Assembly (NCBI GenBank): GCA_976226885.1
Contig: OZ320313.1
Location: 46,314,001 to 46,378,000, forward strand
Origin: Iphione sp. A-MEVVRFRX5
Lineage: Eukaryota
Direction of reading: 5' to 3'
DNA length: 64,000 nt
The notes beneath the pieces were generated by a model, which was not told the origin of the DNA, searched no databases, and saw only the letters and a program-made list of their open reading frames with translations. Both the position numbers and the translations under genes were made by a program. This document shows, one piece after another, positions 52 to 49,004 of the stretch (its first letter is position 1; every line of letters begins with the position of its first letter).

Positions 52-142
52 ATGGGTGACCCACGGAGCTGCAACCCACTGACCGCTCTGGCTGTCTTAG
101 CTAGTCTGCTGGTTACGGCACTCAGCCAAACATGCACAACAG
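52..142 (+). CDS. Gene A exon: signal peptide
   Basis: MGDPRSCNPLTALAVLASLLVTALSQTCTT; hydrophobic core with likely cleavage after ALS; donor AG|GTGAGT at 142/143, phase 1. Confidence 0.85.
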
Positions 143-1614
143 GTGAGTCAACTAGCTTACAGGGTATAGTGTATTGCTGCTTATAAATCAGGCAGAACTT
201 AAAAGGTAACAAATTGACTAGCTTATCTCTTAGGTTGTGTGCGTGCGTGCGGAGATGCGTACATCATAGATGTCTTGGCTATTAAGAAGCAGACAATTTA
301 ATAACTCTGAGCTAATTGCCCTAACTTCGCATCACGTTCACTGATACACACTTAGACGACGATTTAGCACGGTCGCAAGGATCAAAACCCTAACCCTTAG
401 ATGCCCACGCTTAGGTCTGCTAGGTACAACCTTTCAGCCCTGGTTGAAGTTTAGGGCTCATCGGAATGTAAGTCCCTCACTGAGTCGAGGATTCCACTGC
501 TAAACTATCGACAGTAATCTGGCGAAATTTAATAAGTGTAGAATATAAATCTGANNNNNNNNNNNNNNNNNNNNNNNNNNNNNNNNNNNNNNNNNNNNNN
601 NNNNNNNNNNNNNNNNNNNNNNNNNNNNNNNNNNNNNNNNNNNNNNNNNNNNNNNNNNNNNNNNNNNNNNNNNNNNNNNNNNGCTCCGAGAGCCTCTTCT
701 GTTTGACGCTAAAGGCATTCTAATTTGTTTGTGAAATAGCCAAACATCGATTGTATTCAGAACCAAAGGCAGATCACCTTCTTTTAACACATACTGTATG
801 TAATGGAAACAAACCAGACACATGTATACGCTTATACAGTGCACTTAAATGAAACTATGTGAAATTGTCAAATTTAGACAAAATGGAGACGTGATGTGAG
901 GGTGTTTATTTTTAGCAATTTGTGAGATCGTGGGATGCGCAAAGAAAAAGCGCACAAATCGGTAGCACTCAGATTAAACCTGGAAAACTGAGCTCCTGTT
1001 CTTAGTATCGCGCAACGTTGCGTTCCACAAACGTGATATTAAAAGATTATTTTGTCAGAGGGCAATCAGAGACTTGATACCACCTACACTTTCCACAATA
1101 CAGTTACATCTATTTTACATTCACACGAAGTCAAATACATATATATGTATCGCGAATTTGGTACGTTTCTCCACCTTTGTGTTCAGGTGTTAGTTTTTAG
1201 CCTGGTTTGCACAGATTGGAAACCTTTTCGCTACTTGCAAGTTGTGGCAACTGTTTTTTATCTGTCTTACTGCAGTTACCGAGGAGCGGATATGGTGTGA
1301 GCAGAACAATCAAATTCAGGTGTCCGTAGCCTGTGACGAACATTACATCCTGAAGATATGGGAAGTGGACTACTACGCCTCCTTTGAATCTGACTGTCCA
1401 TCCCCTGGTCCCGACTCTGCCCAATGTCACGTAGTCGCCAATCCGGACGACCTGTTGGGTGAATGTCACAAGAGGGAGTCATGCAACGTGACGCTGGCCA
1501 AGAGACCCTTCGTCAACTGCTTTGGAGGAGGCCAGAACTATGTGCGCATGATTTACTCGTGCGAGCCCTGTACGTATCTTATCGCTTTACTCGGCATACC
1601 GCCTACTTGTGTGT

Positions 1615-48000: not shown

Positions 48001-49004
48001 GTCACGAGAGTGGAGTTGCTTACTTTCGGCACACGCCCAAAGCGAGGGTTATGGTCGTCTAGAGAAGGGAAAGTACCGTTTCCTTTTATAAGAGCAGACA
48101 TTACGACGCTGTCCCTTAAGAAAACAGTTCATTTTTCGCCCTCATTGTACTACATCGAGTAGGTCCTGCGTTCACGATCCCAGTAGACTCCACCACGGCT
48201 AGGTTTTATTTTGATGTTGTATCTTCAAGCGAGGCGTCTTCGCTTTTATGTGTACTCCGCCTGTTTACTGGCATTCGTTATCGTGAAGATGTGCCGATGT
48301 CTCCTTCAGTACCTATGCTTTGGTACTTACCAGTATCTGCTGCTCCTTAAGTGTGATTCGGCGTGTTTTGCCACAAACTGTTTGTTCTATATTGATTTTC
48401 GACACACAGAGACGTTTTCAATAATGTCTTCCATTGCATACTATTTGAGTAAGTCTAATAACCACACTGTAAAATAAAAAAAACAGAAGGTTGTGTTCCA
48501 TGCTTTCAATGTACGAATACAATTCTCACATAAATGTCCACACTATGTCCATAACTATGATTTAGCAAAGCGTATTGTTACTCGTGTGTAATTAATCCGA
48601 AGCCAAACAGTGATAAAATCCCAGTTGATTGAACAGTGGCGCCAGAGATTAATCAGTGCGGAGGGCGGATGGTCGAGTCGGGGCTGTTAGCTGACTATTT
48701 AATAACACTGCTGCTTTCCCATCTTGATATTTGCAGAAGGAAGTCCAAGCCAGACGCCAGCAGCTATCCCACCGACACTATGTCCGAGGACCATATCTAC
48801 GAGGAGCCTACCTACTACACCATGCCCTACGACCCAGAGCCGGCGACGCTGGGGCCGCGGACAGACACTAGGAGGGGCCCAATGACGGTGGGAGATCGCA
48901 GTGCTCCGAGTTACGGTCCGCAACCGGTGGCGGTGGCCGTCATAGACGATGTGGCTCACAATCCCCTCTACCGCGGGGAGCATAACATGCTCTTCGCCTA
49001 CTAA
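23877..49004 (+). CDS. Gene B: multi-exon type I membrane protein paralogous to gene A (SP - SUEL-like - CUB-like - 200-aa Thr-rich stalk - TM - alternative tails), about 620 aa (tail 1) or 590 aa (tail 2)
   Basis: Exons 23877-24024, [25029-25040], 30129-30431, 30750-30916, 34464-34671, 34877-35476, 38016-38094, then 47034-47391 or 48737-49004, all join in frame with GT-AG sites. Linking the tails across about 9-10.6 kb is inferred from phase and polybasic starts. Confidence 0.75.
25029..25040 (+). CDS. Gene B 12-nt microexon (GNVT)
   Basis: Branch point TACTAAC at 24972-24978, long pyrimidine tract ending cttcag|, exon gaaatgttacag, donor AG|GTGAGA; frame-preserving phase 1-1. Confidence 0.6.
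30129..30431 (+). CDS. Gene B exon: SUEL/Gal_Lectin-like domain
   Basis: 303-nt phase 1-1 exon (cttacag| ... |gtacgt) encoding DYDRIHCKQDGDLDLTCTGDYAIRILSAR...GSC...QAC...RACNTKTTCRTDV...VGCEGYNGDYILHVIYRCEP, 8 Cys. This frame is not in the ORF track. Confidence 0.85.
30750..30916 (+). CDS. Gene B exon: CUB-like domain, N-terminal half
   Basis: ctctgttccag| ... cag|gtgagt, phase 1-0; ICSG...AHIHSLVP...TTSCMCLIDVPANVEVQ. Confidence 0.85.
31147..31766. mobile_element. pogo/Tigger-type MITE in a gene B intron
   Basis: TA|CAGTGGAACATC...GATGTCCCACTA|TA (imperfect TIR, TA flanks). The right subterminal sequence resembles the right end of the 54969-56774 element. Internal GTGTGAAGGAA repeats near 31500. 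Confidence 0.65.
34464..34671 (+). CDS. Gene B exon: CUB-like domain, C-terminal half
   Basis: caacag| ... g|gtgagt, phase 0-1; WCGQKIVLRDGADSREFC...LRC...TLELSFVNND...FNISIW aligns with the gene A exon at 3147-3336. Confidence 0.85.
34877..35476 (+). CDS. Gene B exon: CGLP motif plus Thr/Ser/Pro-rich mucin-like stalk (600 nt)
   Basis: cttacttcag| ... g|gtgagc, phase 1-1; covers ORF 34897-35502 (FWCGLPPTTSTTASTVTSST...). Confidence 0.85.
38016..38094 (+). CDS. Gene B exon: transmembrane helix
   Basis: 79-nt phase 1-2 exon VLIIGAVVGGLIFVILVVTGAAFFCA; acceptor ctgcttttgtttccag|, donor ag|gtagga; same length and phases as the gene A TM exon. Confidence 0.85.
47034..47391 (+). CDS. Gene B alternative terminal exon 1: Tyr/Pro/His-rich cytoplasmic tail
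   Basis: TACTAAC branch point then acacccag|, phase-2 entry: RQPFRRRKAAAAAAASLPMGGPHTYESTVHKLPPPPPGGNPYAF...DDNIYCEI...H10...TPYRALRL*. AATAAA follows 21 nt after the stop. Confidence 0.7.
47412..47417 (+). promoter_or_regulatory. Candidate polyadenylation signal for tail-1 isoform
   Basis: AATAAA just downstream of the stop at 47391. Confidence 0.45.
48737..49004 (+). CDS. Gene B alternative terminal exon 2: Tyr-motif cytoplasmic tail
   Basis: ctttcccatcttgatatttgcag| phase-2 entry: RRKSKPDASSYPTDTMSEDHIYEEPTYYTMPYDPEP...DDVAHNPLYRGEHNMLFAY*. Confidence 0.7.

What the first reader, a model, noticed from the sequence alone, without database searches (positions are those of the whole stretch)
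52..49004. Tandem pair of deeply diverged SUEL-CUB-mucin-TM receptors
Seen: two same-strand genes with identical domain order, intron phases (1,1,0,1,1,2), a 79-nt TM exon and a CGLP motif, despite low apparent amino-acid identity. Established: SUEL domains occur in EVA-1/EVA1C, latrophilins and rhamnose-binding lectins, and CUB domains in neuropilins, BMP1 and C1r/s. I do not recognise a characterised protein with a single SUEL plus single CUB plus mucin stalk plus TM and a Tyr-motif tail. Inference: an old, uncharacterised receptor family in a local cluster, possibly for guidance, adhesion or innate recognition.
Basis: partly seen in the sequence, partly recalled or inferred. Interest (0 to 1): 0.75.

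Follow-up and report, generated by a model that had tools for sequence, protein, structure and literature searches.

The report
Two lectin-CUB receptor genes in array
The two genes look real and encode single-pass surface proteins with a lectin-like head, a very diverged CUB-like domain and a mucin stalk, but they are two of about 16 such genes in a tandem array lying backwards inside the ASCC3 helicase gene, and no function is known for any of them.

Summary
Gene A (52-5302, 413 aa) and gene B (23877-49004, 590-652 aa) lie on the + strand. Each has seven exons with AG/GT at every junction and no internal stops. Both share intron phases 1,1,0,1,1,2, a 79-nt TM exon and a CGLP motif at the start of the stalk. 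The N gap (555-682) lies in intron 1 of gene A and touches no reading frame.

The SUEL call is supported: eight Cys, and an AF2 model (pLDDT 87) whose 13 best PDB matches are all SUEL/latrophilin lectin domains. Pfam scores stay below cut-off, and the YGR/DPC/KYL sugar motifs are absent.

The CUB call is probable, not proven. Pfam, PDB sequence profiles and the Atlas see nothing. A profile-profile comparison with paralogues' true CUBs gives P=1.8e-4, in register.

"Tandem pair" understates it. There are 16 same-strand SUEL/CUB heads across 360 kb, antisense between ASCC3 exons. This scan described the same array before, on DNA 122 kb downstream. Gene A has a seven-exon counterpart in another species with all six introns at matching positions. 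I found no RNA data, no annotated full-length relative and no characterised homologue. The family is an uncharacterised, fast-diverging receptor family of moderate interest.

The parts
52..142 (+). Gene A exon 1: ATG and signal peptide, ends in phase 1
   Evidence: Read from the sequence and checked by script. The L010 counterpart has the same exon end, C-T-x-G with g|gt.
555..682 (.). Assembly gap (N), inside intron 1 of gene A
   Evidence: The intron spans 143-1275, so no coding frame crosses the gap.
1276..1569 (+). Gene A exon 2: SUEL-fold domain with 8 Cys, phase 1-1
   Evidence: Pfam SUEL 22.3 bits, below the 31.4 cut-off, but matching profile positions 2-80 of 80. AF2 pLDDT 87. The Foldseek top 13 hits are all SUEL/latrophilin Lec domains.
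2756..2958 (+). Gene A exon 3: N half of the CUB-position domain, phase 1-0
   Evidence: 31% identical to the L010 exon with the same boundaries. No Pfam hit.
3147..3336 (+). Gene A exon 4: C half of the CUB-position domain, phase 0-1
   Evidence: 48% identical to L010. hhalign of five such exons against eight canonical CUB C halves gives P=1.8e-4.
3605..3814 (+). Gene A exon 5: CGLP motif and Thr/Ser-rich stalk, phase 1-1
   Evidence: The acceptor is weak but matches L010's acceptor position, ag|TGTC.CAC.
4627..4705 (+). Gene A exon 6: 79-nt transmembrane exon, phase 1-2
5128..5302 (+). Gene A exon 7: cytoplasmic tail with NYAFVRDIYLDGD, stop at 5300-5302
   Evidence: This is the most conserved exon against L010 (51%). 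The motif is also present in neighbouring gene Z.
23877..24024 (+). Gene B exon 1: ATG and signal peptide, phase 1
25029..25040 (+). Candidate 12-nt microexon (G-N-V-T), phase 1-1, optional
   Evidence: Good AG and GT sites and a compatible phase only. No other support.
30129..30431 (+). Gene B exon 2: SUEL-type domain with 8 Cys, phase 1-1
   Evidence: Pfam SUEL 20.2 bits, below cut-off, but matching profile positions 1-80 of 80. Groups with a B-like ORF, P0001/L009, from another sample (96/95).
30750..30916 (+). Gene B exon 3: N half of the CUB-position domain (ICSGQ...SCMCLIDVP), phase 1-0
   Evidence: A weak, in-register match to the N-half HMM, E=0.35.
34464..34671 (+). Gene B exon 4: C half of the CUB-position domain, phase 0-1. 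An alternative phase-0 acceptor at 34356 would add 36 aa.
   Evidence: AF2 of ORF 34356-34670 gave pLDDT 61, and the fold matches are generic jelly rolls including CUBs.
34877..35476 (+). Gene B exon 5: CGLP motif and a 200-aa Ser/Thr/Pro-rich stalk, phase 1-1
38016..38094 (+). Gene B exon 6: 79-nt transmembrane exon, phase 1-2
47046..47391 (+). Gene B last exon, option 1: tail with YAFP, NIYCEI and a His/Gln-rich end
   Evidence: Phase-2 acceptor and an open frame to the stop. No evidence on usage.
48737..49004 (+). Gene B last exon, option 2: tail with HIYEEP, YTMP and NPLY
   Evidence: Phase-2 acceptor and an open frame to the stop. No evidence on usage.

Best explanation
Genes A and B are two intact members of a tandem array of about 16 same-strand genes for type I membrane proteins. 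The domain order is signal peptide, one SUEL-fold domain, one CUB domain (strongly diverged in A and B), an O-glycosylated mucin-like stalk that begins with a conserved Cys, a single TM helix encoded by a 79-nt exon, and a variable cytoplasmic tail.

Together with the gene just upstream of the window (gene Z), A and B form a distinct, fast-diverging subclade. Its SUEL exon ends in C-E-P.

Inferred mechanism: the SUEL-CUB head is held away from the membrane on the stalk and binds an extracellular ligand. That ligand is more likely a protein or a non-canonical glycan than rhamnose or galactose, because the YGR/DPC/KYL motifs are lost. The tail then signals or directs trafficking through tyrosine motifs of the form [DEN]-x-[IV]-Y, plus YxxP and NPxY.

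The gene structures, the SUEL fold and the array membership are shown here. The CUB identity in A and B is probable. Ligand, signalling and biological role are inference. The role I think most likely is surface recognition in immunity or self/environment sensing, as is typical of tandemly expanded, fast-diverging receptor arrays.
For: - **Gene models.** All junctions are AG/GT, no exon has a stop, and the phases are identical.
- **Cross-species support for gene A.** A 1.06-Mb contig from another sample (L010) carries all seven exons in the same order at 31-51% identity. All six introns are at the same positions, and the tail is the best conserved exon.
- **SUEL.** There are eight Cys, and six Cys columns are invariant across the family. 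The AF2 model has pLDDT 87, and the Foldseek top 13 hits are all SUEL domains (ADGRL3, LAT-1, SUL-I, CSL3).
- **Array.** SUEL/CUB heads lie at 16 + strand sites on C1:46160973-46521021. Eight neighbours carry a significant CUB directly after the SUEL exon: three reach Pfam's cut-off over the full domain, and all eight are hit by the neighbour-derived CUB HMM.
- **TM exon.** The 79-nt exon with phase 1->2 occurs in A, B, three other array genes and L010.
- **CUB in A and B.** Five C halves of the A/B type against eight canonical C halves give hhalign P=1.8e-4, aligned to the domain end. The N halves of genes Z and L011, which belong to the same clade, match the canonical N-half HMM at E=8.8e-7 and 1.7e-3. 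A mixed profile finds cubilin, ADGRG6, neuropilin-2 and PCPE CUBs in the PDB.
- **Subclade.** The SUEL tree groups A, B, Z, L009, L010, L011 and L012 at 99/97, A with L010 at 94/97 and B with L009 at 96/95.
- **Tail motif.** It is shared by A, Z and L010.
Against: - No RNA run was listed, so expression and splice junctions are unverified.
- Pfam SUEL scores are below the gathering cut-off.
- The CUB of A and B is invisible to Pfam, to a PDB sequence profile built from the five A/B-type exons alone, and to Atlas features.
- The only foldable contiguous piece gave pLDDT 61, and CUB matches did not rise above other jelly rolls (Z 5.8-6.8 against a top Z of 7.0).
- Gene A's exon 5 acceptor is weak.
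- Gene B's exon 4 start and last exon are ambiguous, and its tail exons lie 9-10 kb from the TM exon.
- The tail motifs are short and could be chance.
- The SUEL tree rests on 99 columns with long branches.
Confidence: 0.78

Rival explanations
1. The middle domain of A and B is not a CUB. It is an unrelated or novel beta-sandwich that replaced the CUB in this subclade, so the architecture is SUEL-X-mucin-TM.
For: There is no Pfam CUB hit on any of the five exons of this type, even at E<=10. A profile of those exons finds nothing in PDB sequences. The Atlas does not recognise the gene B exon. Fold matches are generic cupin and viral jelly rolls. HMMs built from the neighbours' CUBs do not reach significance on A or B.
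Against: The domain occupies the same position, with the same flanking phases (1...1), as true CUBs in eight paralogues. hhalign gives P=1.8e-4, in register, with the two Cys and the final F..G columns conserved. Clade members Z and L011 keep a recognisable CUB N half with the family's CxC motif. Nine of the 50 best VIA matches are CUB domains aligned over their whole length.
Confidence: 0.15
2. One or both genes are unexpressed relics (pseudogenes) of the array, and their open exons survive by chance.
For: There is no RNA evidence. Gene A has a weak exon 5 acceptor. Gene B is stretched over 25 kb with two candidate last exons and an ambiguous exon 4. Divergence from the neighbours is extreme.
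Against: All 14 exons are open with canonical splice sites. Gene A's counterpart in another species keeps all seven exons open, with identical intron positions and a conserved tail. Gene B's SUEL exon has an intact counterpart in another sample. All eight Cys are kept in both SUEL domains.
Confidence: 0.1
3. The proteins act as true rhamnose/galactose-binding lectin receptors, that is, pattern-recognition receptors for microbial glycans, through the canonical SUEL sugar site.
For: The SUEL fold is confirmed, and the structural matches include the sugar-binding SUL-I and CSL3. SUEL lectins of invertebrates bind LPS and agglutinate bacteria (PMC10817417, PMC8878817).
Against: The YGR, DPC and KYL motifs that mark sugar-binding RBL domains (PMC10817417) are replaced. 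Gene A has YYA / VNC / NYV and gene B has RKR / VGC / DYI, and the Lys of KYL is absent in all 10 family sequences aligned. The best structural matches are latrophilin/LAT-1 Lec domains solved in complexes with protein ligands (teneurin, TOL-1).
Confidence: 0.2

Closest known systems
Latrophilin (ADGRL1-3 / LAT-1) N-terminal lectin (RBL/SUEL) domain
   Same: These are the best structural matches to gene A's SUEL exon (8djg, 8suf, 2jx9, 6vhh; TM 0.6-0.67, probability 1.0). In both cases a single SUEL domain sits at the N-terminus of a membrane receptor.
   Different: Latrophilins continue with olfactomedin, hormone-binding and GAIN domains and a 7TM region. Here the SUEL domain is followed by a CUB, a mucin stalk and one TM helix. 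Sequence identity is only 16-21%.
EVA-1 / EVA1C
   Different: EVA-1/EVA1C has two SUEL domains and no CUB or mucin stalk. I did not test homology beyond the shared domain type.
Secreted rhamnose-binding lectins (SUEL, SUL-I, CSL3, GYL-R)
   Same: The same fold and the eight-Cys pattern (PMC10817417).
   Different: Those lectins are soluble, often have tandem domains and keep the YGR/DPC/KYL motifs. A and B are membrane-anchored, have a single domain and lack these motifs.
Single-pass CUB receptors with Tyr-motif tails (neuropilins, DCBLD1/2, CDCP1, LRP3/12, NETO)
   Same: A CUB-containing ectodomain, one TM helix and a short tail with tyrosine motifs. YxxP motifs, as in DCBLD tails, occur in both gene B tail options. 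This comparison rests on my own knowledge, not on a test here.
   Different: None of them combines a CUB with a SUEL domain and a mucin stalk. I detected no sequence relationship outside the CUB domain type.
The rest of the same array
   Same: Same strand, same exon plan (SUEL 1-1, CUB 1-1, stalk 1-1, a 79-nt TM exon 1-2) and the same nesting in ASCC3.
   Different: A, B and Z form a separate clade. Their SUEL exon ends in C-E-P, an extra phase-0 intron splits the CUB, and in A and B the CUB has diverged beyond HMM detection.

Membership tests
SUEL / rhamnose-binding lectin domain (PF02140) | About 100-aa alpha/beta fold with eight conserved Cys (four disulfides) | tested here: met
   Both genes have eight Cys, and six Cys columns are invariant across 12 sequences. 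Gene A's AF2 model has pLDDT 87, and its Foldseek top 13 hits are all SUEL domains. Gene B was not folded.
SUEL / rhamnose-binding lectin domain (PF02140) | Score above Pfam's gathering cut-off (31.4 bits) | tested here: not met
   22.3 bits for A and 20.2 bits for B, although each match covers the whole 80-position profile. The neighbours score 29-47 bits.
SUEL / rhamnose-binding lectin domain (PF02140) | YGR, DPC and KYL motifs of sugar-binding domains (PMC10817417) | tested here: not met
   At the aligned positions gene A has YYA / VNC / NYV and gene B has RKR / VGC / DYI.
SUEL / rhamnose-binding lectin domain (PF02140) | Binding of L-rhamnose or D-galactosides | not testable with these tools
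   This needs recombinant protein and a glycan binding assay.
CUB domain (PF00431) | Significant match to the CUB profile | tested here: not met
   No hit on exons 3 or 4 of A or B at E<=1, or at E<=10 on the C halves. The domain is split over two exons, and the joined sequence was not searched. Three neighbours are hit above the cut-off over the full domain (37-42 bits).
CUB domain (PF00431) | Homology to bona fide CUB domains by profile-profile comparison | tested here: inconclusive
   The C half gives P=1.8e-4 and probability 49%, in register. With only four sequences, the two halves gave P=0.013 and 0.0097. The N half is bridged through genes Z and L011. This is supportive but below the usual certainty.
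CUB domain (PF00431) | Ten-strand beta-sandwich (jelly-roll) fold | tested here: inconclusive
   Only the contiguous ORF of gene B exon 4 could be folded. It gave pLDDT 61 and is all-beta. CUBs (1spp, KREMEN1, C1s, NRP1/2, enteropeptidase) match at Z 5.8-6.5, no better than cupins and viral jelly rolls.
CUB domain (PF00431) | Conserved Cys pairs (C1-C2, C3-C4) | tested here: inconclusive
   C3 and C4 are invariant in the C-half alignment. Gene B keeps both N-half Cys positions (ICSGQ, SCMC), while gene A keeps only the second.
SUEL-CUB-stalk-TM array nested in ASCC3 (this genome) | Same strand and location inside the array | tested here: met
   A is at C1:46315287 and B at 46344137, between members at 46300390 and 46392006.
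SUEL-CUB-stalk-TM array nested in ASCC3 (this genome) | Shared exon plan, including the 79-nt TM exon with phase 1->2 | tested here: met
EVA-1 / EVA1C | Two SUEL domains in the ectodomain and no CUB | tested here: not met
   Each gene has one SUEL exon, followed by the CUB-position domain.
Latrophilin / ADGRL | Olfactomedin and GAIN domains plus a 7TM region after the lectin domain | tested here: not met
   Each gene has a single hydrophobic segment, and no Pfam hits of those kinds appear on the candidate exons scanned.

The most novel reading that the evidence does not exclude
The array is a lineage-specific family of diversifying recognition receptors, for immune, allorecognition or gamete/settlement cues. 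Its heads evolve fast, and its members are wired to different tyrosine-based signalling tails. Gene B switches between two tails through alternative last exons. The array has been kept for a long time inside an ASCC3 intron, with conserved gene order and spacing across species.
Probability: 0.25. Interest if true: 0.7.

Novelty: new variant of a known kind. Interest (0 to 1): 0.45.

Why it matters
SUEL and CUB domains are each well known. A single-pass receptor that joins one of each to a mucin stalk has not been characterised in the papers I could search, and the role of SUEL-type proteins in lophotrochozoans is described as elusive (PMC8878817).

Here the architecture is expanded to about 16 tandem genes. 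The heads are diverging and the tails are unrelated to one another. That pattern is usual for recognition receptors and gives a defined gene set to test for immune or sensory roles.

The nesting of the whole array antisense inside ASCC3 is also a neat case for studying how nested gene families persist. Gene order and spacing are conserved in a second species.

For annotation, the result shows that two members would be missed, or called domain-less, by standard domain scans.

Tried and rejected
- **RNA evidence.** The look-up of sequencing runs listed no run.
- **A against B by tblastx.** Only the CGLP/Thr-rich stretch matched.
- **Own-genome search with each CUB-position exon.** This gave self hits only.
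- **HMMs from 3, 8 and 10 neighbour CUBs against all window ORFs.** Neither A nor B was significant.
- **Atlas features for the gene B exon 4 ORF.** It was not recognised.
- **PDB sequence search and Pfam scan on the five A/B-type C halves.** Neither found anything.
- **Fold of the gene B exon 4 ORF.** Confidence was low, and both Foldseek and VIA gave generic jelly rolls.
- **Search of 1.84 billion representatives with the A+B SUEL profile.** There were 13 hits: the family-specific ones are short exon-sized ORFs from metagenome assemblies, and the longer ones carry several SUEL-like stretches. No full-length family protein was found.
- **Word search with the tail of neighbour L002.** It found two exon-level ORFs only.
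- **Four literature searches for a SUEL+CUB receptor.** None found one.
- **Joined sequences.** So the complete CUB-position domain of A and B was never scanned or folded as one piece.
- **Readings rejected.** EVA-1/EVA1C, latrophilin and neuropilin orthology fail because the domain sets differ. The "isolated pair" reading fails because the array has about 16 members.
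Full report
**Setting.** The window is G000:C1:46314001-46378000 (+) of a 1.18-Gb genome in 89 contigs. It has two N runs, 555-682 and 55090-55233. The Atlas neighbours of a paralogue's CUB are mostly annelid or chordate clusters. I could not verify the species.

**The gap.** The gap at 555-682 lies between gene A's signal-peptide exon (52-142, donor g|gtgagt) and its SUEL exon (acceptor at 1275|1276). It is therefore intronic, and no reading frame crosses it. The link between the two exons is supported by the counterpart gene in another species (L010). 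There, a signal-peptide exon ends in the same C-T-x-G, phase-1 way about 0.65 kb upstream of the SUEL exon.

**Gene models.** I read the sequence, listed splice sites and checked the models by script.
- Gene A has seven exons and encodes 413 aa.
- Gene B has seven exons and encodes 590-652 aa, depending on the exon 4 acceptor and the last exon.
- Every junction is AG/GT, no exon has an internal stop, and the phases are 1,1,0,1,1,2 in both genes.
- Both TM exons are exactly 79 nt.
- Both stalk exons carry C-G-L-P near their start.

The two proteins are barely alike. Their SUEL exons are 24% identical, and tblastx finds nothing else. No RNA run was listed for this DNA, so the models rest on sequence logic and conservation.

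**Cross-species support.** A profile of the two SUEL exons was searched against 1.84 billion representatives and returned 13 hits. The family-specific hits are exon-sized ORFs from ENA metagenome assemblies, presumably host DNA.
- **L010.** This is 20 kb of a 1.06-Mb contig. It holds a complete gene A counterpart, with signal peptide, SUEL, two CUB-position exons, a stalk exon starting V-S-H...C-G, a 79-nt TM exon and a tail. Identity is 31-51% per exon, and all six introns are at the same positions. That includes the counterpart of gene A's weak exon 5 acceptor.
- **The tail.** It is the best conserved exon. Gene A has NYAFVRDIYLDGD and L010 has NYAYIGDVYLDGD.
- **L011.** This locus from another sample has the same architecture, with a more canonical CUB N half.
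- **P0001/L009.** This is a counterpart of gene B's SUEL exon from another sample.

**SUEL.** Pfam matches both exons over the whole profile but below the cut-off, at 22.3 and 20.2 bits against 31.4. Both keep eight Cys. An AF2 model of gene A's exon, built with a 12-row alignment, has pLDDT 87. Its 13 best PDB matches are all SUEL domains: ADGRL3, LAT-1, latrophilin-1, SUL-I and CSL3. The YGR, DPC and KYL motifs that mark sugar-binding domains (PMC10817417) are not kept. The fold is therefore SUEL, and canonical sugar binding is doubtful.

**CUB.** Standard tools see no CUB in A or B.
- Pfam finds nothing on the exon ORFs.
- Atlas features do not recognise the gene B exon.
- A PDB sequence profile of five such exons finds nothing.
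- HMMs built from the neighbours' CUBs are not significant.

The evidence in favour is as follows.
- The domain sits where eight paralogues have a significant CUB, between the same phase-1 boundaries.
- Genes Z and L011, from the same clade, match the canonical N-half HMM at E=8.8e-7 and 1.7e-3.
- Five C halves of this type against eight canonical C halves give hhalign P=1.8e-4, in register to the last residue.
- The C3 and C4 Cys and the F of the final strand are invariant in the joint alignment.
- That joint profile finds cubilin, ADGRG6, neuropilin-2 and PCPE CUBs in the PDB.

The domain is split by a phase-0 intron in every member of this clade. It gave pLDDT 61 and is all-beta. CUB domains appear among its matches (spermadhesin Z 6.5, KREMEN1, C1s, NRP1/2, enteropeptidase), but they do not rise above other jelly rolls. 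My verdict is a probable, strongly diverged CUB.

**Not a pair but an array.**
- Family profiles find + strand SUEL exons at C1:46160973, 46164586, 46189381, 46300390, 46315287 (A), 46344137 (B), 46392006, 46400228, 46406316, 46412310, 46418603, 46429018, 46436978, 46482967 and 46520776.
- A further CUB lies at 46496562.
- The 79-nt TM exon recurs in three other array genes and in L010.
- A SUEL tree separates A, B, Z and the four other-species ORFs from the canonical neighbours (99/97). It pairs A with L010 (94/97) and B with L009 (96/95). So A and B split before those species did. The tree rests on 99 columns and has long branches.

**Nesting in ASCC3.** On the minus strand, Sec63 exons lie at 46142155-46148843 and 46616611-46618230, and DEAD exons at 46616045 and 46623173. 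Two of these exons match human ASCC3 (8ALZ_B) at 1.3e-31 and 2.9e-16, far better than SNRNP200. The array therefore lies antisense inside ASCC3.

**Conserved order.** The tail of neighbour L002 has 43-48% identical ORFs in two other metagenome contigs. One is the same 1.06-Mb contig as L010, about 125 kb upstream of the gene A counterpart, as in this genome.

**What it most likely does.** Shown here: these are secreted-pathway type I proteins with a SUEL-fold head and a Ser/Thr/Pro-rich stalk (about 45 aa in A and 200 aa in B), one TM helix and a basic stop-transfer. Their tails contain [DEN]-x-[IV]-Y (DIY in A, NIY and HIY in B, EIY in Z, DVY in L010), YxxP (YAFP, YEEP, YTMP) and NPLY. Inferred: the head binds a ligand away from the membrane, and the tail gives tyrosine-based signalling or sorting. 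The tandem expansion, the fast-diverging heads and the unrelated tails favour a recognition role in immunity or self/environment sensing over a conserved developmental one. Nothing here tests that.

**Known relatives and novelty.** Four literature searches found no characterised SUEL-CUB receptor. A review states that the role of SUEL-type lectins in lophotrochozoans remains elusive (PMC8878817). Other notes of this scan report SUEL-CUB(-Sushi) genes at other loci of this genome, and SUEL and CUB hits do lie close together on C11 and C13. The same array was already described by this scan on DNA 122 kb downstream. This report adds the divergent A/B/Z clade, the SUEL fold test, the cross-species gene model and the limits of the CUB call.

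Noticed in passing
G000:C1:46142155-46148843 and 46616045-46623298 (minus strand; outside the window, which is C1:46314001-46378000): ASCC3 exons flank the whole receptor array on the opposite strand. They comprise the second and first Sec63 domains and two DEAD-domain starts, and their best PDB match is ASCC3 (8ALZ_B) at 1.3e-31. The window therefore lies inside the ASCC3 gene.
   Followed up: partly
window 47046-47391 and 48737-49004: Two candidate last exons follow gene B's TM exon. Both have a phase-2 acceptor, and both start with basic residues (RRRK / RRKSK). They carry different Tyr motifs. They could be alternative 3' exons or a duplicated orphan tail, and no usage data exist.
   Followed up: partly
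window 34356-34463: An in-frame, stop-free extension upstream of gene B's exon 4 has its own strong phase-0 acceptor. It reads like a second copy of CUB N-half strands (VLYYTYTSGDG...VCYILQ). The AF2 model of the 105-aa ORF aligns over the whole spermadhesin CUB, at low confidence.
   Followed up: partly
window 25029-25040: A 12-nt candidate microexon (G-N-V-T) lies between gene B's exons 1 and 2. It has a long pyrimidine tract, AG and GTGAG sites, and keeps phase 1. No other support was found.
   Followed up: partly
L013 (G000:C1:46297000-46306999), 13.6 kb upstream of the window: Gene Z is a third member of the A/B clade. Its SUEL exon ends in K-C-E-P, its CUB N half is still recognisable (CxC), and its tail motif DYAFDNEIYMTDG resembles gene A's.
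   Followed up: partly
L010 and L016 (ENA ERZ26222911, contig ctg1020817, 1.06 Mb): In another species the counterparts of neighbour L002 and of gene A lie on one contig, on the same strand, about 125 kb apart. The order and spacing are the same as in this genome.
   Followed up: partly
window 47311-47370: Gene B's tail option 1 ends in a His/Gln-rich run (HNHHHHHHHHHHQQQHH) encoded by a CAC/CAA-rich stretch.
   Followed up: no
window 57435-58700 (minus strand) and 55090-55233: A 422-aa open frame looks like a LINE-type reverse transcriptase by eye (not scanned). A second assembly gap lies nearby. Neither is part of the finding.
   Followed up: no
G000:C10:77.39-78.09 Mb, C2:116.07-117.22 Mb, C1:2.3-3.7 Mb, C13:92.15-92.64 Mb: Further clusters of SUEL exons exist elsewhere in the genome, which has at least 72 exons above Pfam's cut-off. 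SUEL and CUB hits also lie near each other at C11:5.34 Mb and C13:11.17-11.18 Mb.
   Followed up: no
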